This document shows positions 21,551 to 64,000 of a stretch of 64,000 nucleotides of DNA, piece after piece. This stretch comes from Macrostomum lignano (taxonomy: Eukaryota), in the NCBI GenBank assembly GCA_002269645.1, contig NIVC01001171.1:1-64000 (forward strand), in the 5' to 3' direction. Within the stretch, counting starts at the first letter, position 1. Each line of letters begins with the position of its first letter. The translations under genes were made by a program, and so were the position numbers. The notes beneath the pieces are model-generated. The model was not told where the DNA came from. It made no database searches and was given only the letters and a program-made list of their open reading frames with translations.

Positions 21551-22886
21551 AGCGCCACAGGCACTTACGAGCGTATTATGGCGCCGATATGCGAATTTTA
21601 GCGCCAGAAAAAAATTTTGATTTCCATAACGGGCCACAAGGTGCGGAGGGGGACAAACCATTGGCATGTCCCCTATAGCTTTTACAGGGGGACATGTGCC
21701 CCCCGGTGGCGACGCCCCTGAGTGCAGATTAGTCAAGAGCATATAGTTAAGCATTTTATTTGCTCGCTTAGGCAACTGGAGCACAAGGACGCTACACTCG
21801 ATTTTCTAAGAAGCATGGGGGGACATGCCAATGCTGTCTCCCCTATCCCATCATCTTGTGGCCCGTTGTGGAAATCAATAATTTTGCTTTAGGGCGCCAA
21901 GTGTCTGCGGCGCCATAGTGAGTGTCTGTCTACGGAGCCAAAATAAGTGCTAACAACACTGATTCCCAAAATAATGTAGGAATTTAGTCGAGTAGAATTC
22001 TTGGCGTCGTCCCCCACCATAAAATTTATGGCGACGCCCCCTGTATGGTGAGCTAAAAACGCCACTGCTCCAGAGTCTGTGATGGCATCTGGCATGCTCC
22101 GATAGCAAGCTGAACGTACTACTGACCAACTTCAAAAGTAGCAATTCGGCTCAACCGTTGTCAAGCGAGTATTTCTGTACAAATCTTGGTAAAAAAAACT
22201 AGATATTGTCAGACGTGGACTCTATTAAATTAGTTGAAAGCAAATGTACAACAGAGTTTAATGCGGTTTCACACTGACAGTGCAAAAAGTTAATTTTTGA
22301 AATAACACCCACTCCTTCAATCCCAGTGTATATTTTAGTTGCAGAAAACTTCCAGTAAATCCATTGACAAGTTATGACTAAAATATATTAGCCGAACTGC
22401 TTACTTAAACAGTAGTTTGTCAGGGCAAAGCAATTATTTTTTGAGCCATCACAAATTACAAAATATTAACAAAGATGCACAACAAATGACAAAAATCCGT
22501 CAACACAGAAAAACAAAAGACAAGCAAAGAAGCACTGGTTTTTTGTCTCTGATTAAGCAATATGTATTTTACAAAAGTGTCCTGAATGAAATAGCCATAA
22601 TAACAAACCTATATAAACAATTACGCTACTTTACATCAAGGATGAGTAATCATTCGTACAAACAATAGCATATTAAAATTCAATTTAATATAAAATAATA
22701 TTAAGTAAAAAGGAAGGCTTCGGAACTGAGAGATAAATCAGAGAGGAAATATTAACACTAGAATTTTACGTTAACTAATAATAGTAATAATAATAATGAG
22801 ACAAGAGAAAGAGCGAGAGACAGTCGGGTCTGGACAGAACGAACTTATTTTTAATGGCTGACAGTCTTGTCAGACTTGGCGCTCGC

Positions 22887-37527: not shown

Positions 37528-38673
37528 AAGTGGGCGGAGACCCGGAGACCTCCATGCAGTTCGAGCACCGAGAGAGTGAGTGAGTGGGACTCAGACCCGT
37601 TCCTCTGGCAAACACTTCAGCTCACTTGAGCTATTCACTCTCCCGTTCTCTGTCTGCCTGATGGAATATTCTATGGCTGCGAGTCCCGTTCGTTTAAAGA
37701 CTCGAGAGACTCATTGGAGGCTACAGAATTGTGTAATTAACTATTAGCTACCTTCTCAGTAATTAATCTTATTTGCTGGCAACTGTGTATGTGCTGTTTT
37801 TGCTTTCAATTACCAAAGACAGCGCATAGTAGGGAATGCTAATATGCAGCTAATATGATCTGAGTGTCTATATACAAGATTCAGTGGTAGATTAAGTGAC
37901 TGGGATAATCCAATTTCTCTTTGGCAAAGAAGCAAGACAAGCAGAAGTTTCTCCCTGTGTGTGTTTGTTTGTGTTTTTATTTTGAAAAGAAGCAAGAAGG
38001 AACAGAAAACAAGCCAAACAGTCGCAGGAGCACGTAGACACAGAGTTCGAGTTCTCCCAGCCGAAGACAGGAAAAAGACGAATGGCATTCCGAGCGGAAA
38101 TGTTTTGTAATTAACGGGCCCGTCACGGTGGATGAAGGCCTGTCAGCGCGGAATCCCCAGCAGGATGCTGGGGATTTACTGCCGTGTCTTTTTGGGGTTT
38201 GCAATGGGCCTGTTCCCCCCTCTCCTCTGTGGCCTTTCTTAGCTCCTTTATTCGCTAACAGAATTCTCTTCCCAAACCCTCCGATCCCCGAGTCTGTGCT
38301 CCCAGATCGTTAGCCGTCAGCGAGGCCGTCAGCGAGGCTCATATCAATATGCAAGTCTGGAAGCCTCATCGCGCCCCGCCCCCCGCATGATGCCCTCGCG
38401 AGGGGGGAGTTATTTTGAGTCCGTTCCGAGTTCCGGGCTGCTGGGAGACGGGGACAGCACGTTGGCTGGCGTGGGAGTTTCTGATGGCCCAGTTTATTCC
38501 CACCCTGCCCCCTTCCTTCCCGTCATTGTCCAGTCTGTTGAGCACGATGTGAACTGCGAGCTCATCGATTGAGCATTGATAGCTGCTTGGGATCCTCAAA
38601 TGCAACTGGGGACACTTCTGTGATGTAAGCGGATTAGCAAAATGGAGGATGAAATGAGGGTGCAATCGTGAAT

Positions 38674-39807
38674 GGGAACGGGATCGGGAACGGGATCGGG
38701 AACGGGATCGGGAACGGGATCGGGAACGGGATCGGGAACGGGATCGGGAACGGGATCGGGAACGGGATCGGGAACGGGATCGGGAACGGGATCGGGAACG
38801 GGATCGGGAACGGGATCGGGAACGGGATCGGGAACGGGATCGGGAACGGGATCGGGAACGGGATCGGGAACGGGATCGGGAACGGGATCGGGAACGGGAT
38901 CGGGAACGGGATCGGGAACGGGATCGGGAACGGGATCGGGAACGGGATCGGGAACGGGATCGGGAACGGGATCGGGAACGGGATCGGGAACGGGATCGGG
39001 AACGGGATCGGGAACGGGATCGGGAACGGGATCGGGAACGGGATCGGGAACGGGATCGGGAACGGGATCGGGAACGGGATCGGGAACGGGATCGGGAACG
39101 GGATCGGGAACGGGATCGGGAACGGGATCGGGAACGGGATCGGGAACGGGATCGGGAACGGGATCGGGAACGGGAACGGGATCGGGAACGGGATCGGGAA
39201 CGGGATCGGGAACGGGAACGGGATCGGGAACGGGATCGGGAACGGGATCGGGAACGGGATCGGGAACGGGATCGGGAACGGGATCGGGAACGGGATCGGG
39301 AACGGGATCGGGAACGGGATCGGGAACGGGATCGGGAACGGGATCGGGAACGGGATCGGGAACGGGATCGGGAACGGGATCGGGAACGGGATCGGGAACG
39401 GGATCGGGAACGGGATCGGGAACGGGATCGGGAACGGGATCGGGAACGGGATCGGGAACGGGATCGGGAACGGGATCGGGAACGGGATCGGGAACGGGAT
39501 CGGGAACGGGATCGGGAACGGGATCGGGAACGGGATCGGGAACGGGATCGGGAACGGGATCGGGAACGGGATCGGGAACGGGATCGGGAACGGGATCGGG
39601 AACGGGATCGGGAACGGGATCGGGAACGGGATCGGGAACGGGATCGGGAACGGGATCGGGAACGGGATCGGGAACGGGATCGGGAACGGGATCGGGAACG
39701 GGATCGGGAACGGGATCGGGAACGGGATCGGGAACGGGATCGGGAACGGGATCGGGAACGGGATCGGGAACGGGATCGGGAACGGGATCGGGAACGGGAT
39801 CGGGAAC
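38674..39807. repeat. (GGGAACGGGATC)n satellite, about 94 nearly perfect copies
   Basis: 12-bp periodicity with only two 6-bp GGGAAC duplications. Confidence 0.98.
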
Positions 39808-40115
39808 TGGCAATGGGGTCGGTAATGAGAAAGCTACTGCATAGCAGCTGGCATTTGTTTATCTCCGAGACAGACCGACTAAAAAATGCTTTTCAAAATC
39901 GAATATATTGAAACAGAAAGATAATTAATAGCGCCGCAGATTGCTCAATCTCCCACGGGAATCGCTTTACACCAACAGGGAACTCCCCAAGTTCAAGAGA
40001 CCTGCCATGACGGGGGCGCTAACCCGGATGTGGGAGATTCTCTCGCCACGTCTCCCGCTTTGCTCTCCCCTCGCTCTTCATTCAGCATTCGGTGGCACGC
40101 AAAGGCGTCACAATG

Positions 40116-40610: not shown

Positions 40611-42064
40611 CTCCTTCAGGCTGCTCTTCGCTGTGATGACTGACTGCTCACAGCTATAATAAATGCATTCTATACCACAACTGTCAATCAATCTATGCAA
40701 AGTCAATATTTTATTTAAAATGCTTTTGCCCGTCAAAAATCAATATTGGCCCCTGAGCCCATGACTGAGGGCTTATACCGGTAGGCTTATACCTCTATTA
40801 AAAAACATAGAGATTCATTTTATCAAAAAATGACGCAATCTAGTTCCCTGTACCAAAACCAGCGGAACCGGAAGTGTGACGCAACCGTGCTCTTAATTAA
40901 CCTGGCTTATGCGGTCGGACTGCTCAATTATTTTGCCCCAGATGAGGGTAAATATTCAGACAGTCAGGTGCGCCGCTTTTAATTAATTGCTCTCGAATTG
41001 CTCCTGGAAAAGACGATGACTTCCGGGTTTTTAACTGCATAGAAGGCAGGCGGCAGCTGAGTCGGTAACAATAACTTCAGGAGGGCTGCGGCCCAAATCG
41101 TCAGGGCATGCATCAAGAGTCGTCTCACCTTCTGCTAGCTGGGCAAACATCCTGCGGTTTCCGGTAATTCAAAAACTGTTTGCTCAAAGCAAACTGTTGA
41201 TGATTAAAAAAATGGTTATTTGAACAGTAGTTGCCAGACACATTAATAAGTATTGGCACAGATTAACAACTGACACAGTATACAGTATTCTGTTAAAGCT
41301 TATAGCTGTTCCACTGCCTCGCCTGTTTGTCTTTAATCGCAGAAATGGTCATGCCACATTTTCCTACACAGCATTGCTCTGCTCTTTCCCCTCCAATTCA
41401 AGAGGCTGTGTTTATTTAACTCTCGTGTTTCTGGTGGACACAGCATCCAGATGCAGCTGAGAGGCTGGCCAATTAGCAAAACTGCTAAAACGCGACAAGA
41501 GAGGCTGCCCACCGCAATTCCCTCACACTGAGACAAGTGTGTGCGGGCCAGCGCCACTTCACCCCGCGCCCCTTGTTTCCAGGAAACGGCTTGTCCTCCG
41601 GGAATTCCCAGCGGACCCAAGCCGGACAGCGTCTTCGAAGGTTTCTTCGAAATCTTTCTGCTCCACCGACCGCTTGCTGTTGTTGTAAATTGAGAGCAGA
41701 ATTGAGGGAGGGACATGAGGGGTGAGAACTGTGGGTGGAGTGCTTCCTTCCCGCCACTCTAATTGGCAAAAGGGTCCCGTATTGACGCTGCCATCATCAG
41801 AGGCAGAGCCAATTATTACCAATTCGAGTAGTATAGGATAGATAAGAGAATATCCTCTCGCTAAGCTTCCTGCTGTGAATGGACAGACGGAGCAGGAGTG
41901 GAACTGGGGACAGAGGGGCAGTCCTGAGGGGATTTCAAAACAGCGCCTGAAGCGATGCATGCAGATACTTGTTATCAACAGATTCAGACTTTGGTGTGGC
42001 CGGGACAGGTTCCGGTACAGCTGCAGTACCGCGTGGCCATTCAGAAGCAGCTGAGCACAAAATC

Positions 42065-42500
42065 AGCACTCTCAAACCGGCACTCTCAAATTGGCACTCT
42101 CAAATTGGCACTCTCAAATCGGCACTCTCAGATCGGCACTCTCAGATCGGCACTCTCAGATCGGCACTCTAAAATTGGCACTCTCAGATTGGCACTCTCA
42201 AATCGGCACTCTCAAATCGGCACTCTCAAATTGGCACTCTCAAATCGGCACTCTCAAATCGGCACTCTCAAATTGGCACTCTCAAATCGGCACTCTCAAT
42301 TCGGCACTCTCAAATCGACACTCTCAAATTGGCACTCTCAAATTGGCACTCTCAAATTGGCACTCTCAAATCGGCACTCTCAAATCGGCACTCTCAGATC
42401 GGCACTCTCAGATCGGCACTCTAAAATCGGCACTTTCAGATCGGCACTCTCAAATCGGCACTCTCAGATCGGCACTCTCAGATTGGCACTCTCAAATCGG
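42065..42500. repeat. 14-bp minisatellite (GGCACTCTCAAATT/C)
   Basis: Direct periodicity. Confidence 0.93.
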
Positions 42501-42696
42501 CACCTTCCAGAGTCACAAACACAAAAAATAAAACATGCCAGACAGCTTAGTCTTACTTGTTCGATTTTTAAAGGCATTTGCCACTCAATAGTTAGTTGGC
42601 CATTCTCAGTTATAATTGTTATTTCATTATTATTTGCATTTCTTGTTCAAGTACACCTTCGCTACTCCATCGTAGGGATTTGAAGTTATCTAATTG

Positions 42697-43000: not shown

Positions 43001-43140
43001 AGGCCGTAGCGCCCTTGGCCAACAACAATCCGCAATTGTTGAAGTAAAGAAGACGCAAAGCGGCCACTCGGCAGCCGGGCCCAAGTTCTCATCATCTGTC
43101 AATCGCACTCGATAGGAACCCCATTAGCAATCGCTCAGAC

Positions 43141-45537
43141 ATGCCATCCCTGCACCAGATTGACTCCGGAAACGGCGCCAACGGTTCGAAGCATCGGGTG
43201 CACGACGACGGCGGCGCGGCAGCGACTTCCGCGTCCGGCAGCGGCAGCACTGAGGAGCCATCCGGCGACTCCGAGGCCTGCCTGCCGCGGGTGAAGCTCG
43301 CCACCAACGGCGCTGGAGTTGGCAACGGCAACGACGACGGTGTAACAACCCGGAGAAGCCGGTGCAGCGCCCGGACCTGCATCCTGACGGCGGCGGTGAT
43401 CATTCTGGCGGGTGGCCTGGCCGCCCTCTGCGTCCTGTACTTCGTGGTTGGACCTGCGCGCGGCTTCAGCTTCGGCTTTGGCGGCGCTGGCGATGGCGGC
43501 GCCAAGGGAGGCGCCGCGGCCAGCAGCCAAATCGGAGCCGAGGGCTGCGCCGTGGTTGTCGCCGCTGCCGGCGCGATGTCGGGCCCGGAGATGGCGGCCG
43601 CCACGGCCTTCATGCGGCCCGGCGAGTCACCCTGCCGCAGCTTCTACCGGCACGCCTGCGGCGGATTCGCCGACGGTGCCGCCGGCGGTGTCGCCCTGCC
43701 CTGGACTGGAGACCGGGTCCGGCGCCAGGTTGGCGCCATCGACTTGGCCGGCCGGCGCATCCGGGAATCGCTGCTGGAGTCGCTGCTGCTACCAAAAGAG
43801 CTGCTGGCCGGTCCCGGCGCCGCCAGCTGGAAGTCCGCGGTCGGCAATCTGACTTTGGCCTGCTCGCGCCAGCTGGCGCCGCTGACAGCCAAAGAGCTGC
43901 GCGCCGTTTTCGCCGACCGGCGCCGATTCGCCCAGACCGCCCTGCTGGCCAGCCGCTCTGCCGCCTGGGGTGTCGCCGACTCGCCGGAGAAGGTGCTCGC
44001 CCAGTTCGCCTCGCACGGCCTGCCCGTAGCCTTCGAAGTCTCTCCGCAGGTGGCGCAGCCGGCGCCCGTGACGGCCGGCCACCTGCCGCTGTGCTTGCGG
44101 CCGGTTCGCCCCGCCCTGCCGCCGATGCCGCGCGACCGGATGCACCGCCTGATCGCCGCCGCTTTCGAAGCGATGGGCCGCGGCGTGCCGTTTCTCATCG
44201 CCGGGAAGATCCTGGCGCTGCACAACGGCCTGCACGAGATCCTTCGAAGCGCTGATGTGGCCGACGCCAGCTCAGCGCAGTTCGAGATGCGGCCAATTGC
44301 AGCTCTGCACGCCCTGTTTCCTAATGGCCGTTTCGGCTGGGAGGCCTTCCTGGCCGAGCTGCTGGCCGGCGGCGCCGAAGGCGGCCCGACAGCTTCGAAT
44401 GTGGCCGGCTACTCCTCGGCCTGTCTCAGCGGGGAGCGGACAGTGACGGAGGCGGTCAGGCTGGCGGCCAGCCAGGACCCGGACACCCTCATCGGCTACG
44501 CGCTGATTAACGCTCTGGCCGGGCTGCGGCCCCACATCGGACACCTGCTGCCGCCGAAGCTGCTGCAACTTCTGACCGTCGCCACCACATCCGAAGACGT
44601 CGCGCTCGACAAGCTGTCGAAACCATCGCAAGTTCCCGACGTCTGCTTGGACACCGCGCTAGCGCTGTTTCCACGAGTTGTGCACCGCGTCCTGGCCGAC
44701 AAGCACCCGCTGGGCTCGGCCGAGGGCCTCACGCGCCGAGTGCGGGCCGCCTTGGTTGGCCTCGGGGTCAAGAGCAACGTTGAGGACCTGGCGCTGGACC
44801 CATACCTGACCGGTGGCGGTGCCAGCGCCTACAGTGACGCCGCACTGTCGGCTCTGCACAGCGACCTGAGCCTGCCGGAACCGGAAGAGGGCTACCCAGC
44901 CGCTCTGCTGTCGGCCATGCGCCACGCCTTTCTGGCGCCGCTGCGGGCCGCCCTGCGCGGTCACTCGATAGCGCCGCTTCCATCGTCCAGCGAGCCGCTG
45001 CTCCTGGCGCGCGACCTGTCGCCGACGGCTTCCGAGACGCCGGTTTTCGACAGCCGCCTGCCGCTGCATTTCTACCTGGCCGCGCTGGACGGCGCCCAGT
45101 TCTCCCTGCTGCTGGCGCGTCAGCTGATGCCGCCGAGGCCGCGCCCGCCGAAGCCGGAGCTGCTAGCTCTGCACGGCTGCCCGGGCATGGACTCTGCTAT
45201 TGCTGCCCGTCTGGCGACGCTGCGGGTCAGCTTCAAGGCGGCTCTGACCGCTGCGACGGCGTCGTCTGCGACATCGGAGTCGAGTGCGGCTGACTGGCGC
45301 AGAGGATTCTACCTGCGCGCCGGGCAGCTGCTCTGCCAGCGGTTCGCTTCGCCCGCCGAGGCCGACGGAGCTGCTGCCGCGGTCGACTGGGCCATCGGTG
45401 GCCTGCCGGATTTCCGGCGCGTCTTCCAGTGCGGCCTGGAGGCTGAGCCGACGGCCGGAGAGGCGGTGGACCGTCGGAGGGGCTGCCCGAGAGTCCCTGA
45501 TGGCGGCTCTTGGGCCGTTGGTGCAACTGCCGCCTGA
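43141..45537 (+). CDS. Intronless type II membrane neprilysin (M13)-like protein, 798 aa, predicted catalytically inactive
   Basis: N-terminal TM ILTAAVIILAGGLAALCVLYFVV; M13 signature MRPGESPCRSFYRHACGGF; C-terminal FYLRAGQLLC and GLPDFRRVFQCG. No HExxH in the protein. Confidence 0.85.
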   Translation: MPSLHQIDSGNGANGSKHRVHDDGGAAATSASGSGSTEEPSGDSEACLPRVKLATNGAGVGNGNDDGVTTRRSRCSARTCILTAAVIILAGGLAALCVLYFVVGPARGFSFGFGGAGDGGAKGGAAASSQIGAEGCAVVVAAAGAMSGPEMAAATAFMRPGESPCRSFYRHACGGFADGAAGGVALPWTGDRVRRQVGAIDLAGRRIRESLLESLLLPKELLAGPGAASWKSAVGNLTLACSRQLAPLTAKELRAVFADRRRFAQTALLASRSAAWGVADSPEKVLAQFASHGLPVAFEVSPQVAQPAPVTAGHLPLCLRPVRPALPPMPRDRMHRLIAAAFEAMGRGVPFLIAGKILALHNGLHEILRSADVADASSAQFEMRPIAALHALFPNGRFGWEAFLAELLAGGAEGGPTASNVAGYSSACLSGERTVTEAVRLAASQDPDTLIGYALINALAGLRPHIGHLLPPKLLQLLTVATTSEDVALDKLSKPSQVPDVCLDTALALFPRVVHRVLADKHPLGSAEGLTRRVRAALVGLGVKSNVEDLALDPYLTGGGASAYSDAALSALHSDLSLPEPEEGYPAALLSAMRHAFLAPLRAALRGHSIAPLPSSSEPLLLARDLSPTASETPVFDSRLPLHFYLAALDGAQFSLLLARQLMPPRPRPPKPELLALHGCPGMDSAIAARLATLRVSFKAALTAATASSATSESSAADWRRGFYLRAGQLLCQRFASPAEADGAAAAVDWAIGGLPDFRRVFQCGLEAEPTAGEAVDRRRGCPRVPDGGSWAVGATAA

Positions 45538-51404: not shown

Positions 51405-54400
51405 TCACTTATCGCCATCGCATTCGCCCTCGTTGTTGTTGCACTTGACAGCGTCACCGTTGGCGGAGCTGGCCTCGCTGAGCCCTATCTGCTCGGCGTT
51501 GCAGCCAGTCAATGAGTTGCTGCGAAATCTGTATCGATTGAATATTTTTAGGGTTTTGAGATTTTCTGCGCAAATTCGCAGTAATTTTCTAATCAGTCCG
51601 AAAGTCCGTCCTCGTATCTCTGCCGTAATTAACGACTATGTACATTAAGCCATTCCTTATCTCTCTGCCCCATTTATTTAAAATGTACATTAACCCAATC
51701 TTTATCTCTCTGCCACATTAATTTACAGTGTACATTAATCTAGTCTTTATCTCTCTGCCCTATTCATTTACAGTGTACATTAACCCAATCTTTATCTCTC
51801 TGCCCTATTCATTTACAGTGTACATTAATCTAGTCTTTATCTCTCTGCCCTATTCATTTACAGTGTACATTAACCCAATCTTTATCTCTCTGCCACATTA
51901 ATTTACAGTGTACATTAATCTAGTCTTTATCTCTCTGCCCTATTCATTTACAGTGTACATTAACCCAATCTTTATCTCTCTGCCCTATTCATTTACAGTG
52001 TACATTAATCTAGTCTTTATCTCTCTGCCCTATTCATTTACAGTGTACATTAACCCAATCTTTATCTCTCTGCCCTATTCATTTACAGTGTACATTAATC
52101 TAGTCTTTATCTCTCTGCCCTATTCATTTACAGTGTACATTAACCCAATCTTTATCTCTCTGCCCTATTCATTTACAGTGTACATTAACCCAATCTTTAT
52201 CTCTCTGCCCTATTCATTTACAGTGTACATTAACCCAATCTTTATCTCTCTGTCCTATTCATTTACAGTGTACATTAGCCCAATCTTTATCTCTCTGCCC
52301 TATTCATTTACAGTGTACATTAACCCAATCTTTATCTATCTGCCCTATTCATTTACAGTGTACATTAACCCAATCTTTATCTCTCTGCCCTATTCATTTA
52401 CAGAGTACATTAACCCAATCTTTATCTCTCTGCCCTATTCATTTACAGAGTACATTAACCCAATCTTTATCTCTCTGCCCTATTCAATTACAGTGTACAT
52501 TAGCCCAGTCTTTATCTATCTGCCCCATTTATTAACAATGTACATTAAACCAATGCTATCTGAACTATATTTAAATTAATACATAATTTATTTGCGACTC
52601 ACCCAGGATTCAAGGCACCGTTGGCGAATACCGCAGAGGAATCGGGCTCCAAGCCAGCCGCCTTGTCCTTGTCGATTGTGGATGCGGCAGCGGCGGCAAC
52701 AGCGGCAGCGGCAGCAGCAGCGGCGACAGTATCAGTGGTCAGGCCAGCAATGGAGTGACCGTTGATTAGCGATTGTTTTTTGTGGCTGCAGGTGATAGTT
52801 AATCGTACTACTTATAAACGTCGAACTTGATTATCGTGCGTTAATTTTTGCGGCAAGAAATTGTGGCTATTTACCTTTTTTTAATTAGCTTTTTAGGATC
52901 TTCCGGGCTAAAAAAAGTTATGAGTTGGGTAATTGTTGTGACTAGCTGCACGTTTTTTCATTTAAATTTCAACTAAATTTTGATTCAAATCAAACTAACA
53001 TTTGATCAAGGACCGATATAAAGGGGCAATTTGTTTTTCTCCGGCAAAATTTCAATGGTTCTTTGAATTGCAAATTTAATACAATAGAAATGGAAAACAA
53101 CAAATTGCATTGAGGTACCGGCGATTTATCGGCAGAAATGAATCTAAACTACGAGCGTATACTGCATCAAGCGAGCCTTCAAATATTTCTACAATACGCT
53201 CGCGATCGTAGTAGGTGTTACGTCCTGATAACACCGTTTCTTCTAGTGGTCCTTGATTGGCACTTTCTCATCTTCTGCACTTTTAAAGCTAGCATACATA
53301 TGCGTTTGGTTTGAGTAGGTCTCAAGTTTACCGGCTTGGATTTAGTAGGGGATGTCAAGTTAAGCACCGAAATGAAGCTCGAAGATACGGGCCAAACCTA
53401 CGGATTGACAGTTTGCCACCCCAGTCAAAATGAACAACGATATACCCCTTTCCAGGTCCCTTCCAGGTCCTGAATTAATGAGCTATTTCATGTAACATGT
53501 AACATGGTCTGAATGCCAATCAAAATCTTTAGAATAGAACGCACGAGCTCGATCGGACAGAATAGCAAGGAGTGCGGTTATTGAGAAGAAGCCTAAATTA
53601 TTCCTGCATAATACCTGTATGGCTTCAACAGCGACAGTGATTAAAGTCGATCGAACGACGTCGACTGACATCACTAAAATGACGCCGACTGACATAACTA
53701 AAATGACGTCGATTGACGTCGCTAAAACGACGTCGATGAGGCTGTATCATTTCGACGTGATTTTTACCAGCAGGGGGAATTGGGATACGGAAACCAAAAA
53801 AATCTGTATGCAGTTGAGTGCTACATCCTACAACTAGTGCTACATCCTACAACTAGTGCTACATCCTACAACTAGTGCTACATCCTACAACTAGTGCTAC
53901 ATCCTACAACTAGTGCTACATCCTACAACTAGTGCTACATCCTACAACTAGTGCTACATCCTTGACGACAGATTCGGCACTCGCTTACGCGCACTTCCTC
54001 ATGGTTAGAGCGACGACGGTGAGCAGCAGAGTGAACCCAACTGCGGCCGACACCACGACTAGATTGATGAAGTGCGGCGGTGGGATGCTGTAAAACTGAG
54101 CATCGATGTACACAATATAGTGGCCGATGGCATCGTACAGCTTCATGCGGTTGTTTTCGATGATGGCTGCAAATATTCAGAGTGCAACACTGTTCACAAT
54201 CGTTTCAATGATTTTACTGGTAAGAAAATATCCGGGATACTGCGAGCTTCCAAATGTTTCCAAAAGATTCGAAGTTTTTGAGTCTTTACGCACTCGGACA
54301 GGATCCTGTCTTTGAATTCGGACACCGGAGTCCCGACTATTCAAGACAAGTTGGGGCAAAAAATTCTAATCTGGATTTTCTAAAAATGATTTCTTAGTCT

Positions 54401-56545
54401 ATACGATCATTTAAAATTTCCCTGCTGGTTGACAGGAATGAAAAATAGATCTCGCTATAGAATTGTAAAGTACAAGATCTTTTTCAAGTAGCTGGAAACC
54501 ATCCCGTACTGTTCTGAAAAAAGTTTGTCCCATTCGCGGATACCAGCCCAAGCAACAGGTACGCGCGTAAAACGCGCATACTTGGATCGGGCAGGCCCAA
54601 TCTAGCCCAGCCAATGAGAGAGCTGTAAGGAGAGAGGTCAAAGTTAGACGGACGAACCTCAGTCTAGGGGGGGGCAGGCCCAATCTAGCCCAGCCAATGA
54701 GAGAGCAGTAAGGAGAGAGGTCAAAGTTAGACGGACGAACCTCAGTCTAAGGGGCAGGTCCAATCTAGCCCAGCCAATGAGAGAGAGCAGTATAGCTAGC
54801 CGATCGATCTTGCATTCTTCTGAGATAATGAGATGTAAAATCTCATTTACGCTCGTAACCAAATACGACTATGAACTCATTCTTCTAATTAATTTCGGAA
54901 CAGGTAAAACGATCTGCTATCTTTTATTAGTTACTTACTAGTAGTATCAGCAACTGGCAAGATAAAATTGATTTCATTCTCGCCCGGCTGCTGCAAGCTG
55001 TAAGCGATGGACAGGCGCAGGTTGAGGTAGTGCGAGTCCACATTGGCCGGATAGCCCGGGCTGAAACGTACGCTAGCAGCGGTGAAGTTCCTGCGGAGTG
55101 GAATTTTGCGTGCCTTTGTTAAAAAAATATTGCAGTTCGTTTGTTTTACTAGCATCATTGTAACCAATTGAAATTTATTTGAAGGTCTGATTTTGTTCAA
55201 AAAACTTTTTTTTCAGTTCTATTACACTGATCATTTGTATTGATAATTTGCCACGTTTCAAACTTCTAATGTGCATGCATATAGTGTTAGTTACTCTCTG
55301 GATACTCACTGGATAGTAGATACTCACTAGTTACTCTCTGAATACTTACTGGATAGTGGATACTCACTATAGTTACTCTCTGGATACTCACTGGATAGTG
55401 GATGCTCATTAGTTACTCTCTGGATACTCACTGGATAGTGGATACTCACTATAGTTACTCTCTGGATACTCACTGGATAGTGGATGCTCATTAGTTACTC
55501 TCTGGATACTCACTGGATAGTGGATGCTCACTATAGTTACTCTCTGGATACTCACTGGATAGTGGATGCTCATTAGTTACTCTCTGGATACTCACTGGAT
55601 AGTGGATGCTCACTATAGTTACTCTCTGGATACTCACTGGATAGTGGATGCTCACTATAGTTACTCTCTGGATACTCACTGGATAGTGGATGCTCACTAG
55701 TTACTCTCTGGATACTCACTAGATAGTGGGTTATTAACTAGTTGTCGATGGGTACTCACTGACTACTGAAGTAATTAGACCTGTTCCGCCCCCTGTAACT
55801 GGAGGATTTCAATAAACCTAAAGCAGCTTGGATTAGCATTCACTTACTCAAAACTGCTCGAATTGAAGCCGCAGATGGTGAAATTCCCCATGCAGTAGCC
55901 GGTCAGTGCTTGGGCCAGAGTGGCTTTGAATTTCGCTTCCAGACCGGCGCTGGTCCACTGAAACAATGCGATTGCGAAAAAAATTACATAGATATCATAC
56001 TTAATACATTTCTAGCGCCAAAAACTCGATCTACACCTTTCATTTGCCCCTGAGAACATCAGCCTAGTCAAGTGTTATCACCCCACTCGATGCCTTAACA
56101 CTAACCCAGTTCATCACCAACTCAGATCCCTTAGCGCTTCATCAGGTACCTTAAAACCTTCTCAGATTCCCAGTACCTACTCAGATACCTCAACAACACT
56201 TTCTCTGGTGCATAAACAGATTTTTTATCACCATGCAGAGCTTCATATTGATCTTAAGTAGTCCTTGTTGCGTTAGATATTCAATCAATCGCCTTAGGTA
56301 CATGCGTTTAAAGGGGGTCAGATCGATCACTACATCAATCTGATGTGGGTAATCCGAATAATCAGTACATTGCTAACTTCATTCGACATTCGACTCACCT
56401 GATCCAGCTGCAGCATGTAGAACTGCACCCTCACATCTTCCCGCTCGTTAAGAGCTCCGTTAACGACAGCATCTGTTAATGCTGAGCGAGTCAAAGTCAG
56501 CTGCAGTATCAGTATTCGTACGAATAACTCAATGTTGAATCGCAT
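51405..56545 (-). CDS. Type I membrane protein, 297 aa, with a possibly SEA-like ectodomain; exons 56545-56399, 55957-55848, 55090-54939, 54166-53989, 52785-52603, 51528-51405
   Basis: All five introns have strong donors (GTGAGT, GTAAGT, GTAAGT, GTAAGC, GTGAGT), CAG acceptors and matching phases (0, 2, 1, 2, 2); the total is 894 nt. Signal peptide, TM LVVVSAAVGFTLLLTVVALTM followed by RK, and an Ala-rich tail. Confidence 0.83.
51640..52550. repeat. 45-bp intronic minisatellite (TACATTAACCCAATCTTTATCTCTCTGCCCTATTCATTTACAGTG)
   Basis: Direct periodicity; gives the spurious ORF (YINPIFISLPYSFTV)n. Confidence 0.94.
53817..53960. repeat. 19-bp tandem repeat (AGTGCTACATCCTACAACT)
   Basis: Perfect periodicity. 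Confidence 0.93.
54591..54790. repeat. About 80-83-bp tandem duplication (about 2.4 copies), each carrying CCAATCT and CAGCCAATGAGAG
   Basis: Seen directly. Confidence 0.85.
55288..55730. repeat. 40-42-bp intronic minisatellite (TAGTTACTCTCTGGATACTCACTGGATAGTGGATGCTCACTA)
   Basis: Direct periodicity. Confidence 0.92.
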
Positions 56546-58381: not shown

Positions 58382-60397
58382 TCCCTTATTTCTATGGTAA
58401 ACTTATATCGCAGAAGTCCCTGGTCCAGTACAAACCTGATGGGGACCAGTATTGAATATTTGTTGAATGAAAGCTAAAGAACTTAAAGCATAACATGTTC
58501 TTTTTGCTCATGCATGTTTATGTGAAACGTAGAAAACTAAATTTGTTTCCAAGAAAGTAATATCTCTGATCAGATTGTAATCTTCAAGTTCTTCGTTTAT
58601 AAAATGAACTGACCACGAGGCATGTAACAATATAAAATAAGATTACAATGTGATCAAATATTTTACTGAAAGCAGCTGATGACGATAGGAATTCTTTCTT
58701 TGTCATCAGCGAATCAGTGAAATGGAGCATGAATTACAAATGATTAGTGAATGACAATTCGATTTAAACTACTCGATTTACGGAGCCCGGCCTTCCTGCT
58801 GATTGAGAGGGATGTAAAATACGAAGTGAACAGAATCGAGGTACATGTAGCGTGAGCTAGACACCCAGCAGATGGCCATCTAGGGGGCGCAGCTATGACG
58901 AAATGATAAGAAACTGAAATTGAGCTGCCAAACTAACAGGAGCTATCAAAAGGTGTCAAAAAATTCTGTGATAATCTGCACTACGAGCGTAACTATCTGT
59001 TAAAAAAGTGACTAAGTCTGCAAACCATGTGAACCGGGCAACTACTCGTACTTCTTTTTGCTACGATTTACTAGTATTGAAAATCTACACTGAAAAGATA
59101 ATTTTCTGAAATTTGCATTTTATCTATTAAAAGACAGTAGATTAAATTAAAAAATAGCCTTTCAAAACATAAAAAATGCTTAAAAATTATGAATTTGTTT
59201 AAAATAGAGTATTTTAATTTAAAAGACAAAAGGAATTAATTAAGGTTCCGTTCCCGATAAGAAAAAAATAACAAAAAGATCGATTTGGCAAAAAACATTT
59301 GAATGTAAAACGATTTTTGACTCGAAACTAAAATTTACCATCTGAAATCTGTGTATATGTAAAAAATCAGCTTCACAGACCTTACTGTTGCTTCAGTGCA
59401 CGTCTCCAATCTTGCATAGCGTTATGTTGAAACGTCAGAAAATGTACGATTTCGTAGCTACAAGGGTTTGTAACTTTGAATTTATAAAATAACCAGCTTA
59501 TACTCGTAGGTTACAGTGTAATTATACAACAACAGCAACACAAAAAAATACGCAGTCCCCCCAGTAGTCAGTGGAGGGAGCGTCAGATGGCATGTCGAAG
59601 CGCTAGCAGGCGAAGAATCAATTGCCCGGCCCATTGATCGACGGTGTCGGGCGCCACAACGTTGCTCAGGATGCTGTCCATGTATCTCCGTGTCCTCGAT
59701 TGCTTGAGCCCGCTGAACGGTTCCCGCAAAGTGAGCGGCAGGATGTCCTGGACAGGCTTTGGCAATAGCCCGGATCTGCACGTAGCGCCTGTCAGTAGTT
59801 GGAGTCGCCGTCTCGGTGCAGGATGGTACATGTGTTTTTTTGACTTGCAGCTGTGCGTCCCTCTCGCACAGGTCCTTGGACGGGACGATTTTGTCAGCCT
59901 GAACGCATAGAGCAGCCCCGCGGGCCGAGTGCTCCAATTGTCTAGCTGTTGCTCCAGCGTGGCCGTTAACATCGGGACGCTAGAATTCGCACGACTAGAT
60001 TTCGCGCGATCTGGCATTGAAGCGCGCGACTTCTTTCTAGCGACTGGATTTCACGCGACTGGATTTAAGTGTTTAAGGATTTAAGGAAAGCAATCCTTAA
60101 TTATACTCGATATTTGTTATATTTGTTCATATCTAACTACCTTTTCTGAATCGCATACGTATTCATTTCCCGATTGACATTCAGATTCACATTCAAATTT
60201 TAACAAAGCCGCTGTAACTTTTCTTTACTTGAACGAAACGCTTTAAAATTTTACAAAAACTTTGATGCAATCAAGAAAAAAAACTACGTAAAATATCTCA
60301 GCATTTAAAAATAGACTGTAGAAATTATTCACATATAAAGTTTGTTCCTACCTCCTTAGTGTATTATTATGCAACTCAACAAAACGGCTTAAAATAC

Positions 60398-61375
60398 ACG
60401 CAGAGCTACGAAACTTTATTTTTCTCTTGACGCACGCGAGATGCGTTGGCAAGTCAAAAATCAGCACCCTAGCTTAAAGCCTGTACGAGTTATTCACCTG
60501 CAAACTGTGTTCCTATCTCCGTAGTGTATTTTAGGGGTCCAGCTTGACATTCGCTGACAGACACTTCTACTCAACGCAGAGCTACGAAACTTTATTTTTC
60601 TCTTGACGCATGCGAGATGCGTTGGCAAGTCAAAAATCAGCACCCTAGCTTAAAGCCTGTACGAGTTATTCACCTGCAAACTGTGTTCCTATCTCCGTAG
60701 TGTATTTTAGGGGTCCAGCTTGACATTCGCTGACAGACACTTCTACTCAACGCAGAGCTACGAAACTTTATTTTTCTCTTGACGCACGCGAGATGCGTTG
60801 GCAAGTCAAAAATCAGCACCCTAGCTTAAAGCCTGTACGAGTTATTCACCTGCAAACTGTGTTCCTATCTCCGTAGTGTATTTTAGGGGTCCAGCTTGAC
60901 ATTCGCTGACAGACACTTCTACTCAACGCAGAGCTACGAAACTTTATTTTTCTCTTGACGCATGCGAGATGCGTTGGCAAGTCAAAAATCAGCACCCTAG
61001 CTTAAAGCCTGTACGAGTTATTCACCTGCAAACTGTGTTCCTATCTCCGTAGTGTATTTTAGGGGTCCAGCTTGACATTCGCTGACAGACACTTCTACTC
61101 AACGCAGAGCTACGAAACTTTATTTTTCTCTTGACGCACGCGAGATGCGTTGGCAAGTCAAAAATCAGCACCCTAGCTTAAAGCCTGTACGAGTTATTCA
61201 CCTGCAAACTGTGTTCCTATCTCCGTAGTGTATTTTGGGGGTCCAGCTTGACATTCGCTGACAGACACTTCTACTCAACGCAGAGCTACGAAACTTTATT
61301 TTTCTCTTGACGCACGCGAGATGCGTTGGCAAGTCAAAAATCAGCACCCTAGCTTAAAGCCTGTATGAGTTATTC
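60398..61375. repeat. 176-bp tandem array (about 5.6 copies); an inverted copy starts near 63633 and runs off the window
   Basis: ACGCAGAGCTACG recurs at 60398, 60574, 60750, 60926, 61102 and 61278. Confidence 0.95.
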
Positions 61376-64000
61376 CAGTATTAGAGACTGTACGAGATTA
61401 CAGTATTTACGCTTTCCGCCTCTGTAGTCTGGACAGTTACTAAGATTAAGGGAATTCATCTAATGGGAAACATATGACGGGATAGAAAGTTCACAAATTC
61501 GGCTCTGGTCATATAGCTGGGTCACCCACCTGAGCCTTAAAAATAATTTCTGTACGGACCCCCTGCCACACATCCCTTAATGAGCACGCATCGCATCATT
61601 TTTACGCTGCTTTAGTGGGGTCCTCATGATCGGGAGTTGTTTGGGCCATCTGGTGAAGCCCGGAAGTCGAAAACGGGACTCATTGGGAGTCTGCTACACC
61701 ATGCAGCCATGCAGAAGACTTTTTAAACAGTGGATCCTCTTTCTGTGAATGATGAAGAGGTGACCGGACATTTTGTCAACCAGCATTTCGTCAACCGGCA
61801 GTTCGTCAACCAGACATTACGGCAACTCAGCAAATTGTAGCTGATAATTATATAGCTCTGCACCAGCCAGAGAATGTGAGAATGGCCGCTATTAGCAACC
61901 GAGAGAGTCAAAAGCAGGGCTTCCAAGAACTCCAGAAAGCAGAGCTTCTCACCAGCAGCAAATCTGCCGGGCAAGATGCGCCTGATAATTCCTTGTACTT
62001 CTGCGGCAGAAGTATTTTTTAAAGCTAGCATTTGATGAAAAAGCAGCGGCAGAGATCTTTGCAAGTCGCTAGCTATGTCCCGTCTCATTAATGGGCCGTT
62101 CTGCTCCATCCAGTAAAGAAGCTGAATGGCAGAATTGGCATAGCAGTCTGCTCCGCTATTTCTTAGTCCACAGAGAGGCTGCGGCTCTGAACTTCTTGAT
62201 GATGTTTGTTTGGCAGCCTTTGCCCCTGAACTATGCTCTTGACGAGGCTCTGTTCTAACATTTTCCTCAGCAGGTAGAGATGTGTAAAGATTAGCGTTGA
62301 GGCTTTTAGGAAGCTGTGTATCAACGAAGCGGCGCTCAGGATATCGTTGGCGAAAGCAATCTGGGTCGTAGGCATAATGACCTAGGAGCAAAAGAACTGC
62401 CATTACATGGCAGTCACAGCCAGCTGTTCGGCTACCCACTTTGGACGAGGAGTAGTAGGCATGTAGCCTCCTTAGACCGGCATCGTGGAATCCAAAAGGG
62501 TTTCCATTCGGTAAATCGCTGAGGCGAAGAAGGACTCGATATGTTCGAGATGTGTGCCTCGAAAACACAACGGACAAAAATATCCACGACGGTTGCCAGT
62601 TGCCGAATTTCTTTTGCCAGTTCCTTGCCTGCTGTTCTTGCCGGAATTTCCAGCAGCGCATCGATTGAGGCAGCTGCGATGCAAGGTCTTCAAGCTCTAA
62701 CCACGTATCACCGTCGAAATACTCAAGCGTGTGTTGCACCTGGATGTTTTGGATATAGCTTTCAGACTGCTGTACATGAAATGGTCCCACACTTACTTCC
62801 TGAAGGTTGTCTATCTCAATTCGAGGAAAGCCTGTGGACTCTGGATCTAGCACATCGACTGGTGACCAGCGCCTCGACCCTTCGATAGGAATTCGGGTCA
62901 CGTCACACAGGTAGTTCACACCTTCAATCGGATCGAATTCGTTGCTGAGAAACATGCGCCTATTAAAATTCTGACCAAACTCAAAAAGTGAGCTGTCATT
63001 CCATGACTTTGGCAGCGTTTTATTCAATGGGAATCCAATGTGCGATCGGTTGTATTTGGCAATACAGTTGTCGATAATGACATCTAGCCGACTCGACAGA
63101 AAAGCGGAAAAGCGTAGCCAGCTTACTGGTATTTGACTCAATAACAGTCAGTTTTCCGTGAAGGGGGTGATCCTCAGCCGATACTGGATTCTTTGAGCCT
63201 TAGGTTCACATGAAATCCGGTCCGGTCACCGGATCGGAAATAAGTCCGGTCACCTCTTCATCATTCACAGAAAGAGGATCCACTGTTTAAAAAGTCTTCT
63301 GCATGGCTGCATGGTGTAGCAGACTCCCAATGAGTCCCGTTTTCGACTTCCGGGCTTCACCAGATGGCCCAAACAACTCCCGATCATGAGGACCCCACTA
63401 AAGCAGCGTAAAAATGATGCGATGCGTGCTCATTAAGGGATGTGTGGCAGGGGGTCCGTACAGAAATTATTTTTAAGGCTCAGGTGGGTGACCCAGCTAT
63501 ATGACCAGAGCCGAATTTGTGAACTTTCTATCCCGTCATATGTTTCCCATTAGATGAATTCCCCTAATCTTAGTAACTGTCCAGACTACAGAGGCGGAAA
63601 GCGTAAATACTGTAATCTCGTACAGTCTCTAATACTGGAATAACTCATACAGGCTTTAAGCTAGGGTGCTGATTTTTGACTTGCCAACGCATCTCGCGTG
63701 CGTCAAGAGAAAAATAAAGTTTCGTAGCTCTGCGTTGAGTAGAAGTGTCTGTCAGCGAATGTCAAGCTGGACCCCTAAAATACACTACGGAGATAGGAAC
63801 ACAGTTTGCAGGTGAATAACTCGTACAGGCTTTAAGCTAGGGTGCTGATTTTTGACTTGCCAACGCATCTCGCATGCGTCAAGAGAAAAATAAAGTTTCG
63901 TAGCTCTGCGTTGAGTAGAAGTGTCTGTCAGCGAATGTCAAGCTGGACCCCTAAAATACACTACGGAGATAGGAACACAGTTTGCAGGTGAATAACTCGT
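61013..64000. mobile_element. Long inverted repeat: arms of at least 757 bp (left arm ends 61769, right arm starts 63244) flanking a 1.47-kb core; Foldback-like element or inverted duplication
   Basis: The sequence from 63244 onward is the reverse complement of 61769 leftward, nearly identical in my base-by-base comparison. Confidence 0.9.
61723..63141 (-). CDS. 472-aa ORF: C-terminal region of a PIF/Harbinger-ISL2EU-type transposase with a degenerate SWIM finger, fused to the N-terminal half of a USP (C19) deubiquitinase domain
   Basis: FPRIEIDNLQEVSVGPFHVQQSESY, SRHTSRTYRV and VGSRTAGCDCHVMAVLLLLGHY resemble the SWIM-bearing transposase tail as I recall it. GLRNSGADCYANSAIQLL is a USP Cys box, and FAAGEKLCFLEFLEALL resembles the QQD box. 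Confidence 0.68.
   Translation of the reverse strand: MSQIPVSWLRFSAFLSSRLDVIIDNCIAKYNRSHIGFPLNKTLPKSWNDSSLFEFGQNFNRRMFLSNEFDPIEGVNYLCDVTRIPIEGSRRWSPVDVLDPESTGFPRIEIDNLQEVSVGPFHVQQSESYIQNIQVQHTLEYFDGDTWLELEDLASQLPQSMRCWKFRQEQQARNWQKKFGNWQPSWIFLSVVFSRHTSRTYRVLLRLSDLPNGNPFGFHDAGLRRLHAYYSSSKVGSRTAGCDCHVMAVLLLLGHYAYDPDCFRQRYPERRFVDTQLPKSLNANLYTSLPAEENVRTEPRQEHSSGAKAAKQTSSRSSEPQPLCGLRNSGADCYANSAIQLLYWMEQNGPLMRRDIASDLQRSLPLLFHQMLALKNTSAAEVQGIIRRILPGRFAAGEKLCFLEFLEALLLTLSVANSGHSHILWLVQSYIIISYNLLSCRNVWLTNCRLTKCWLTKCPVTSSSFTERGSTV

What the first reader, a model, noticed from the sequence alone, without database searches (positions are those of the whole stretch)
61013..64000. Long-inverted-repeat cassette carrying a transposase-tail / ubiquitin-specific-protease fusion
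Seen: one uninterrupted 472-aa ORF lies between near-identical inverted arms of at least 757 bp. The first ~290 aa resemble the post-catalytic tail of SWIM-containing DDE_Tnp_4-type (PIF/Harbinger-ISL2EU-related) transposases. It continues in frame into a USP Cys box with the catalytic Cys retained, plus a QQD-like box, and is cut by the left arm before any His box. Known: other transposons carry Ulp1 or OTU proteases (MULEs, Zisupton, Helitrons). Inference: a transposon family encoding a C19 deubiquitinase fused to its transposase, which I do not recognise as described. This copy looks internally deleted: there is no DDE core and the SWIM Cys residues appear as Ser.
Basis: partly seen in the sequence, partly recalled or inferred. 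Interest (0 to 1): 0.85.

Follow-up and report, generated by a model that had tools for sequence, protein, structure and literature searches.

The report
Dead Spy-USP transposase fragment inside foldback element
The cassette is a non-autonomous foldback-type transposon carrying a dead fragment of a gene from a different, still active transposon family, whose Spy-type transposase has a ubiquitin-specific protease fused to its C-terminus, a combination I found in no paper on such elements.

Summary
A 472-aa open frame (61723-63141, minus strand) lies between 762-nt, 99% complementary arms.

Residues 3-429 match residues 388-818 of an intact 978-aa protein found elsewhere in this genome. That protein has a C2H2-like finger, an HTH, a DDE_Tnp_4-type core, a SWIM-like tail and a complete USP domain. 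At least 12 copies have intact frames, and seven sequenced ORFs differ by 0-3 nt. Distant relatives in marine metagenomes carry the same fusion.

These parent elements are Spy-type. They insert exactly between AAA and TTT without a target-site duplication, which empty sites at 100% identity confirm.

The "internally deleted copy" reading is wrong. The window's arms are unrelated to the parent family's arms. They belong to a foldback-like non-autonomous family with a 176-bp array, identical termini and 8-9-bp target duplications, present in at least 20 elements. Window 61884-63218 is a captured piece of a Spy-USP element, including 24 bp of that element's own arm. The ORF lacks the DDE triad and the USP His box, so it is non-functional.

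The cassette itself is ordinary. The Spy-USP family it reveals looks like a new variant of a known kind.

The parts
60148..60156 (.). Left copy of the 9-bp target-site duplication GAATCGCAT. The right copy is at C1171:67322-67330, beyond the window.
   Evidence: exact 9-bp direct repeat abutting both termini; 9 bp in the C1487 copy, 8 bp in the C46 copy
60157..60397 (+). Outer TIR domain of the foldback-like element 'X', starting ACGTATTCATTTCCCGATTGAC. Its partner is at C1171:67080-67321.
   Evidence: The same 241 bp occur at 95-100% identity at 41 or more places in the genome, in about 20 or more elements.
60398..61375 (+). 176-bp tandem sub-repeat array of the left arm, 5.6 copies at 99% identity.
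61376..61769 (+). Inner domain of the left arm, inverted repeat of 63244-63637.
61770..61883 (.). Backbone of the X element's middle domain, containing a 15-bp mini-repeat. The ORF reads through it by chance (residues ~421-458).
   Evidence: query 395-508 recurs next to the inner arm in X copies that lack the long gene fragment (C459, C1355, C3307, C5093, C712). Also.
61884..63218 (-). Captured fragment of a Spy-type lineage-A element: transposase tail plus the first third of the USP domain, a short upstream stretch, and 24 bp of the lineage-A arm motif (63195-63218).
   Evidence: 96-97.5% nt identity to lineage-A copies C197, C1332 and C422, confined to this interval
61723..63141 (-). 472-aa open frame with no DDE triad, no USP fingers and no His box. 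Residues 3-429 correspond to residues 388-818 of the intact 978-aa protein.
62395..62457 (-). Degenerate SWIM-like motif YYSSSKVGSRTAGCDCHVMAV. Relatives have GYxCxC..G.R..GCCxHV at this position.
62122..62172 (-). USP Cys box CGLRNSGADCYANSAIQ, with the catalytic Cys codon at 62143-62145.
63219..63243 (.). 25 bp of unassigned junction DNA.
63244..63637 (-). Inner domain of the right arm.
63638..64000 (-). Start of the right-arm 176-bp array, which runs on to C1171:67079 (about 19.5 copies).

Best explanation
Two different transposons are nested here.

(1) The cassette (C1171:60157-67321) is a non-autonomous foldback-type DNA transposon, which I call 'X'. It has long inverted arms built from an outer domain, a 176-bp tandem array and an inner domain, around a non-coding middle domain. 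It is flanked by a 9-bp target-site duplication. That means it was inserted by a transposase supplied in trans that makes staggered 8-9-bp cuts, most likely of the Mutator/Foldback type. The type of transposase is an inference.

(2) Its middle domain contains 1.3 kb copied from a Spy-type (PHIS superfamily) element of lineage A. How it got there is inferred: either template switching during gap repair, or nested insertion followed by deletion. The chimera was then amplified and further deleted, producing a series of X copies with nested sub-fragments.

(3) The 472-aa ORF is therefore a young, unselected remnant. It has no DDE catalytic core and only the Cys box of the USP domain, so it can neither transpose DNA nor cleave ubiquitin.

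(4) The parent family is the interesting part. It is a single-ORF Spy-type transposase: a C2H2-like finger, an HTH, a DDE core (D197, D291, E372) and a SWIM-like tail, together about 690 aa, like canonical Spy transposases. Fused to its C-terminus is a compact ~270-aa USP deubiquitinase with the Cys, His and Asp catalytic residues all present. It inserts between AAA and TTT without any duplication and has been active very recently in this genome.

Inferred and untested: the USP domain is catalytically active. It may help transposition by removing ubiquitin from the transposase itself (self-stabilisation), or from chromatin or repair factors at the donor or target site.
For: Cassette anatomy and TSD. 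The same termini occur in at least 20 elements with 8-9-bp TSDs. Nested sub-fragments of the gene occur in other X copies: residues 222-472, 235-403, 279-472 and 1-472. The window fragment is 96-97.5% identical to lineage-A elements only over 61884-63218, including 24 bp of the A-arm motif. Lineage-A and family-B elements have their own related arms and no TSD. Empty sites: joined flanks with AAATTT match at 100% with no indel, 211/211 bases on C1175 and 207/207 on C487, and further junctions match at 95-99%. Intact protein: the 978-aa ORF scores 37.5-41.4 bits on UCH against a gathering score of 23.9. At least 12 copies have a 995-aa open frame, and seven ORFs differ by 0-3 nt over 2934 nt. 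DDE homology: hits at E 1e-8 to 6e-5 are strong DDE_Tnp_4 proteins at 37-79 bits. hhalign gives probability 100%, E 1.7e-48 over 464 columns, with D197, D291 and E372 on the DGTY, DRGF and VVE motifs, and these residues are invariant in 11 sequences. USP: the profile hits USP2 at E 1.8e-17 over its full length, plus USP12/46/15/4/21/7. The Cys box, His box and Asp are conserved in six USP-bearing sequences at 18-35% identity. The fusion occurs in distant relatives P0012, P0024, P0035 and P0048. Foldback precedent: Tetris has 8-10-bp TSDs and Tm1 has 9-bp TSDs, and both are assigned to Mutator/Foldback. Canonical Spy transposases are about 700 aa and target AAATTT.
Against: No autonomous partner of X was found. 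None of the 134 listed MULE-domain hits lies between X termini, so assigning X to the Mutator/Foldback group rests only on architecture and TSD length. The mechanism of capture is not resolved. Placement of the transposase among bona fide Spy proteins was not tested, because no reference sequences were available. The termini (GGGGATGT and GAGGATGT) fit the published GGANNNNG motif only loosely. There is no direct evidence for USP activity or for its role. Copies are too similar for a dN/dS test. The AlphaFold model of the USP part has low confidence.
Confidence: 0.85

Rival explanations
1. One reading: the cassette is an internally deleted copy of the USP-transposase transposon, still flanked by that transposon's own long inverted arms.
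For: Internal deletion is the usual origin of non-autonomous DNA transposons. Family B also has long arms made of tandem units. Several X copies carry nested deletions of the same gene.
Against: The arms of genuine lineage-A and family-B elements are related to each other and unrelated to the window's arms: blastn with word size 7 finds no hit. TSD behaviour differs, none versus 8-9 bp. The fragment carries a 24-bp scrap of the lineage-A arm inside the X element.
Confidence: 0.04
2. One-off rearrangement or misassembly that joins unrelated sequences.
For: The assembly contains haplotigs (C946 duplicates this locus), and long tandem arrays are prone to assembly errors.
Against: The same junctions occur in independent copies with different flanks and their own TSDs (C46, C1487, C1096, C2285, C2164). 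The full fusion is intact in 12 or more copies and in unrelated metagenome assemblies.
Confidence: 0.02
3. The truncated ORF is a functional product, for example a transposase-derived repressor or decoy made of the tail domain plus a USP Cys-box stub, kept open by selection.
For: The frame is open over 472 aa, and the C46 copy keeps it at 99% identity. Truncated transposases act as repressors in some other systems (general knowledge).
Against: Copies are 95-99% identical, so open frames are expected from youth alone. There is no ATG before residue 63. The last ~50 residues are read from backbone and arm DNA. Sister X copies delete different parts of the fragment. Lineage-A copies carry stops and frameshifts.
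Confidence: 0.06
4. In the parent family the USP domain is a passenger: catalytically dead, or irrelevant to transposition.
For: There is no functional data. The domain is divergent, since single-sequence phmmer against PDB finds nothing. Some relatives in the same clade genuinely lack it (P0005-P0008, P0176).
Against: The catalytic Cys, His and Asp and the finger cysteines are conserved across lineages at 18-35% identity. The domain is present in both major subclades and is intact in every recently transposed family-B copy examined.
Confidence: 0.3

Closest known systems
Spy transposons (PHIS superfamily; Han et al. 2014 PMC4122938; Han et al. 2015 PMC4482050; cgSpy PMC11304231)
   Same: Precise insertion between AAA and TTT with no TSD. 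A single ORF. An N-terminal HTH plus a DDE_Tnp_4-type core, with a core-plus-tail of about 690 aa matching the published ~700-aa transposases. Termini start G[GA]G after AAA, like cgSpy (AAA|GGGCC), cvSpy (AAA|GAGCC) and crSpy (AAA|GGACC). TIRs are sometimes long.
   Different: A ~270-aa USP deubiquitinase is fused to the C-terminus, and these papers mention neither ubiquitin nor a protease. There is an N-terminal C2H2-like finger. The TIRs are 1-5 kb arrays of a ~161-bp unit, whereas the 2014 paper saw no sub-repeat structure in long Spy TIRs. The SWIM-like cysteines are lost. The fit to the GGANNNNG terminal motif is only loose. A Hydra Spy with a 963-aa ORF is listed in PMC11304231 Table S1 and might be the same fusion, but I could not check it.
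Foldback elements (Drosophila FB; Tetris PMC4079207; Tm1 PMC3169594)
   Same: The window's cassette has long TIRs with outer, tandem-repeat and inner domains, a middle domain without working coding capacity, unequal and polymorphic array lengths, 8-9-bp TSDs, and many rearranged or deleted copies.
   Different: The sub-repeat unit is 176 bp rather than 10-30 bp. The middle domain carries a captured fragment of an unrelated (Spy-type) transposase gene. No autonomous partner was identified.
Protease domains carried by other transposons (Ulp1 in MULEs, Ginger and Zisupton; OTU in Helitrons and Ginger, PMC2836005; UCH in Helentron subgroups, PMC11417382)
   Same: A mobile element encodes a cysteine protease of the ubiquitin or ubiquitin-like system alongside or fused to its transposition enzyme.
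   Different: Here the protease is a USP (C19, Pfam UCH) fused in frame to a DDE cut-and-paste transposase of the PHIS/Spy type. I found no paper describing that combination.
Pack-MULE-type gene-fragment capture and filler DNA in deletion derivatives
   Same: A non-autonomous element carries and amplifies a fragment of a gene that is not its own.
   Different: The captured DNA comes from another transposon, not a host gene. The capture mechanism is unresolved.

Membership tests
Spy group of the PHIS superfamily (applies to the gene's parent elements, lineages A and B) | [quoted passage not shown] | tested here: met
   All 16 ends of 8 elements read flank-AAA (or a one-base variant)|G[GA]GGATGT... 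with no direct repeat. Joined flanks containing AAATTT match empty sites at 100% with no indel, on C1175 and C487, and others match at 95-99%.
Spy group of the PHIS superfamily | DDE transposase alignable with PIF/Harbinger/ISL2EU/IS5 catalytic domains | tested here: met
   hhalign against DDE_Tnp_4-positive proteins gives probability 100% and E 1.7e-48, and the D, D and E residues align. Relatives P0008 and P0010 score above the DDE_Tnp_4 gathering score. The query alone does not reach the Pfam threshold.
Spy group of the PHIS superfamily | A single ORF with an N-terminal HTH DNA-binding region | tested here: met
   There is one ORF of 150 aa or more in the 4.26-kb core of the element, and the rest is arm repeats. 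HTH_Tnp_4 scores 22.7 bits, below the gathering score of 27, but aligns in the profile comparison.
Spy group of the PHIS superfamily | Conserved terminal motif 5'-GGANNNNG-3' | tested here: inconclusive
   The termini are GGGGATGT (B) and GAGGATGT (A). GGA is present but offset by two bases. Published Spy primers show similar AAA|G[GA]G starts.
Spy group of the PHIS superfamily | Phylogenetic placement of the DDE domain inside the Spy clade | not tested
   No bona fide Spy protein sequence was available. Peptides implied by published primers matched none of the retrieved proteins.
USP / peptidase C19 (Pfam UCH PF00443) | Profile match above the curated threshold over the whole catalytic domain | tested here: met
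   The intact family-B protein scores 37.5-41.4 bits against 23.9, covering profile positions 2-237 of 254. The family profile hits USP2 at E 1.8e-17. The window ORF alone scores 17.5-20 bits, below threshold, over the Cys box only.
USP / peptidase C19 | Catalytic Cys (Cys box), His (His box) and Asp/Asn | tested here: met
   All three are present in P0003, P0012, P0024, P0035 and P0009, and His and Asp in P0016. In the window ORF only the Cys box is present, so for the window copy this feature is not met.
USP / peptidase C19 | Deubiquitinating activity | not testable with these tools
   This needs a biochemical assay.
Foldback-type non-autonomous element (applies to the window's cassette) | Long TIRs with outer, tandem-repeat and inner domains around a non-coding middle domain | tested here: met
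   compare with the description in PMC4079207
Foldback-type non-autonomous element | 8-10-bp target-site duplication | tested here: met
   9 bp (window), 9 bp (C1487) and 8 bp (C46)
Foldback-type non-autonomous element | An autonomous relative encoding a Mutator-superfamily transposase with the same termini | tested here: inconclusive
   There are 134 MULE-domain hits in the genome, but none lies between the listed X termini. Only part of the candidates were scored, and no further genome sequence could be fetched.
SWIM zinc finger (CxCxnCxH) | Four zinc ligands in the CxC...CxH arrangement | tested here: not met
   The window has SSS...GCDCH and family B has SSS...GCDSH. Relatives have CxC...GCCxH. 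There is no Pfam SWIM hit.

The most novel reading that the evidence does not exclude
An old, widespread clade of Spy-type cut-and-paste DDE transposases carries a catalytically competent USP deubiquitinase fused to its C-terminus. It is found in this genome and in several marine-plankton lineages, and it is transposing now in this genome. The deubiquitinase would be required for efficient transposition, either by protecting the transposase from ubiquitin-dependent turnover or by editing ubiquitin marks on chromatin or repair factors at blunt-ended donor and target sites. That would be the first deubiquitinase-dependent cut-and-paste transposase.
Probability: 0.3. Interest if true: 0.75.

Novelty: new variant of a known kind. 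Interest (0 to 1): 0.55.

Why it matters
Spy elements are unusual because they integrate without any target duplication, and they are being developed as gene-transfer vectors (PMC11304231). A natural, currently active Spy lineage has an in-frame ubiquitin-specific protease. Its catalytic residues have stayed conserved across relatives only 18-35% identical. This offers a directly testable case of a DNA transposon bringing its own tool for the host ubiquitin system. It adds USP to the Ulp1 and OTU proteases already known from other transposon superfamilies. It also suggests a simple experiment: compare wild-type and catalytic-Cys mutant transposases in an excision and integration assay. The window's own cassette matters less. 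It is one more example of a foldback-type element capturing and spreading foreign DNA, and of how a long open frame between inverted repeats can mislead.

Tried and rejected
(1) Pfam on the window ORF and its halves gave only a sub-threshold UCH hit.

(2) The word-indexed search of 5.8 billion proteins found a single relative, P0002, twice. The exhaustive HMMER search was what opened the family.

(3) Single-sequence phmmer of the USP domain against PDB found nothing. The profile search worked.

(4) AlphaFold2 on an 11-sequence alignment gave a confident core and tail but a poor USP part. Foldseek against PDB returned nothing with E below 0.2. The top hits were RNase-H-fold enzymes (EndoV, Tn5, RAG1, P element), and I did not use them as evidence.

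(5) dN/dS on the USP domain is not feasible. Family-B ORFs differ by 0-3 nt, and the L013 comparison was invalidated by indels.

(6) I considered AAA/TTT being part of the element, because the 161-bp unit contains AAAGGGGAT. Empty sites reject this.

(7) Metagenome contigs of relatives do not include both termini, so no TIR or TSD comparison was possible.

(8) Peptides implied by published Spy primers matched none of the retrieved proteins.

(9) The search for a MULE partner of X was negative or inconclusive.

(11) The organism could not be identified with the tools. Only its size (764 Mb, eukaryote) and the marine origin of the relatives are known.
Full report
OBSERVATION. A 472-aa open frame runs from 63141 to 61723 on the minus strand. 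It lies between arms 61013-61774 and 63239-64000, which are 762 nt long and 99% complementary and are truncated only by the window end. The window is the first 64 kb of a 147.6-kb contig in a 764-Mb, 5269-contig assembly, so the organism is a eukaryote. Extending along the contig shows a complete element at C1171:60157-67321 (7165 bp). It has an outer TIR domain (60157-60397 and 67080-67321). It has a 176-bp tandem array of 5.6 copies on the left and about 19.5 on the right (60398-61375 and 63638-67079). It has an inner arm domain (61376-61769 and 63244-63637) and a 1.47-kb middle.

WHAT THE ORF IS. On its own the ORF gives only a sub-threshold Pfam UCH hit on the Cys box (17.5-20 bits against 23.9) and nothing for its first 300 aa. 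In the same genome it has more than 99 relatives. One related lineage, family B, is 43-45% identical and has at least 12 copies with a 995-aa open frame. Its 978-aa ORF (P0003) has a C2H2-like finger and a weak HTH_Tnp_4 hit. It also has a complete UCH/USP domain above Pfam's threshold (37.5-41.4 bits, profile positions 2-237 of 254). The window ORF residues 3-429 correspond to P0003 residues 388-818. It therefore starts after the catalytic glutamate and stops one third of the way into the USP domain.

THE TRANSPOSASE PART. An exhaustive HMMER search of 1.8 billion representatives found 131 relatives. Ten of the weaker ones (E 1e-8 to 6e-5) are strong DDE_Tnp_4 proteins at 37-79 bits. Two closer ones (P0008, P0010) also pass that threshold. 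A profile-profile comparison of the family alignment with those DDE_Tnp_4 proteins gives probability 100% and E 1.7e-48 over 464 columns (query 65-673). D197, D291 and E372 fall on the DGTY, DRGF and VVE motifs, and these three residues are invariant in 11 sequences at 22-51% identity. The tail (about residues 400-690) belongs to this transposase type. In relatives it contains a SWIM-like GYxCxC..G.R..GCCxHV motif. In this genome's lineages that motif reads SSS...GCD[SC]H, including in the intact family B, so the Cys-to-Ser change is a lineage trait and not decay. The AlphaFold model is confident for residues ~60-650, but Foldseek found no significant PDB match.

THE USP PART. A profile of six USP domains from the family matches solved USP catalytic domains over their full length: USP2 at E 1.8e-17, then USP12/46, USP15, USP4, USP21 and USP7. 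The Cys box, the His box (GH[YFW]) and the following Asp are conserved in all USP-bearing lineages despite only 18-35% identity. Two finger-cysteine columns are invariant. The fusion occurs in distant relatives from TARA Oceans and other marine metagenome assemblies: P0012, P0024, P0035 and P0048. In a tree of the core-plus-tail region all these proteins form one clade (SH-aLRT 100), separate from plain DDE_Tnp_4 proteins. USP-bearing members fall in both major subclades. That favours an old acquisition with later losses, although several gains are not excluded. Some 'USP-less' neighbours are probably truncated gene calls on short contigs.

THE PARENT ELEMENTS ARE SPY-TYPE. Five family-B copies with flanks are discrete elements of 6.3-9.6 kb and are 99.5% identical. 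Their long arms consist of a ~161-bp tandem unit in variable copy number. All ten ends read flank-AAA|GGGGATGTCAACTTAAG with no direct repeat. Fuller copies of the window's own lineage A (C422, C197, C1332) have related arms and ends (AAA|GAGGATGTGAACTTAAG), again with no TSD. Joined flanks with AAATTT at the junction match elsewhere in the genome at 100% identity and with unchanged length for two insertions (211/211 bases on C1175, 207/207 on C487). Most of the others match at 95-99%. So AAA and TTT are host bases and nothing is duplicated. That is the defining behaviour of Spy transposons (PMC4122938; PMC11304231). Canonical Spy transposases are about 700 aa with a single ORF. This matches the ~690-aa core plus tail and makes the USP a C-terminal addition. 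The three Spy and PHIS papers contain no mention of ubiquitin or a protease. Searches of the held literature found a UCH domain only as an accessory of some Helitron-like elements (PMC11417382). Seven family-B ORFs are intact and differ by 0-3 nt over 2934 nt. Together with the perfect empty sites, this indicates very recent or ongoing transposition.

THE CASSETTE IS A DIFFERENT TRANSPOSON. The window's arms start ACGTATTCATTTCCCG and share no sequence with the lineage-A or family-B arms. The element is flanked by a perfect 9-bp duplication, GAATCGCAT. Independent copies have 9-bp (C1487) and 8-bp (C46) duplications and end at exactly the same base. The terminal 241 bp occur at 41 or more places in at least 20 elements of 0.8-7 kb. 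C946 is the same locus on a haplotig, with the same flanks and TSD, but its element is 4.4 kb instead of 7.2 kb because the arrays differ in length.

Lineage-A DNA in the window is confined to 61884-63218, at 96-97.5% identity. It ends with 24 bp of the lineage-A arm motif. The segment 61770-61883 belongs to the backbone of the arm family, because it recurs in copies that lack the long gene fragment. Other copies keep nested sub-fragments of the gene.

Long TIRs with outer, tandem and inner domains, a non-coding middle and 8-10-bp TSDs are the published description of foldback elements. Tetris and Tm1 are examples, and both are attributed to the Mutator/Foldback group. The genome has many MULE-type transposase genes, but I could not link one to these termini.

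MECHANISM. Shown: the cassette is a trans-mobilised, non-autonomous element that made a staggered 9-bp cut at its target. Its ORF lacks the DDE triad and the USP fingers and His box. The parent family inserts bluntly at AAA|TTT. Inferred: the gene fragment entered the foldback element by template switching during gap repair or by nested insertion followed by deletion, and it was then amplified passively. Also inferred: the USP domain of the parent family is active and supports transposition by stabilising the transposase or by editing ubiquitin marks at the donor or target site. I put that at about 0.3-0.4.

VERDICT. The cassette is ordinary. The family behind the gene is a new variant of a known kind: Spy-type transposons with a fused USP deubiquitinase and tandem-array TIRs.

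Noticed in passing
L025-L034 (C172, C749, C1347, C1388, C1484), family-B elements: The TIRs of these Spy-type elements are 1-5-kb arrays of a ~161-bp unit whose copy number differs between arms and between copies, giving elements of 6.3-9.6 kb. The 2014 Spy paper reported no sub-repeat structure in long Spy TIRs.
   Followed up: partly
P0003 residues ~612-630; window 62395-62457: The SWIM-like zinc motif of the transposase tail has lost three of its cysteines (SSS...GCDSH) even in the intact, recently active family B. Either zinc binding there is dispensable or the domain has been remodelled.
   Followed up: partly
C946:312202-316601 (L038) versus window 60157 onward: The same insertion, with identical flanks and TSD, is present on a second contig with a 4.4-kb element instead of 7.2 kb. 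This is a haplotig with an array-length polymorphism, and it shows the assembly is not fully collapsed.
   Followed up: partly
L040 1568-2932; L044 202-1944 (marine metagenome contigs): Distant USP-bearing relatives have a separate upstream ORF (454 or 580 aa) with C2H2 fingers. In other relatives (P0005-P0007, P0048) a similar ~370-aa C2H2 region is fused to the N-terminus of the transposase.
   Followed up: partly
PMC11304231, supplementary Table S1: A Hydra vulgaris Spy element (Hyvu-Spy-1, 3517 bp) is listed with a 963-aa ORF, far longer than the usual ~680 aa and close to the 978 aa here. It might carry the same USP fusion.
   Followed up: no
L035 (C422:532001-542000), positions ~390-3830: Gag-pol-like ORFs of an LTR-type retroelement (aspartic protease, RT, integrase-like motifs) lie next to the lineage-A copy.
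   Followed up: no
whole genome: At least 134 MULE-domain hits score above Pfam's cut-off, many in open frames of 500-970 aa and in near-identical sets. This suggests several recently active Mutator-type families.
   Followed up: no
window 55287-55760: A tandem array of a 40-42-bp unit (about 11 copies, 90-96% matches) lies 4.4 kb upstream of the cassette.
   Followed up: no
window 38366-39911, 16062-17461, 20501-21805, 41928-42683, 51902-52579: There are several long simple or short-unit tandem arrays. One is a ~1.2-kb hexamer array with strong GC and AT skew at 38.6-39.9 kb. They give spurious ORFs in all frames.
   Followed up: no
window 1676-3406 (+) and 43048-45537 (+): Two long uninterrupted frames (576 and 829 aa) look like real host coding sequence. 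The first has multi-pass membrane segments reminiscent of a polycystin/TRP-type channel. The second is GC-rich and Ala-rich. Neither was scanned.
   Followed up: no
C18:155664-155786; C37:647411-647529: The 114-bp backbone segment of the X middle domain (window 61770-61883) also occurs at 90-92% identity away from any X arm, so it may itself derive from another repeat.
   Followed up: no
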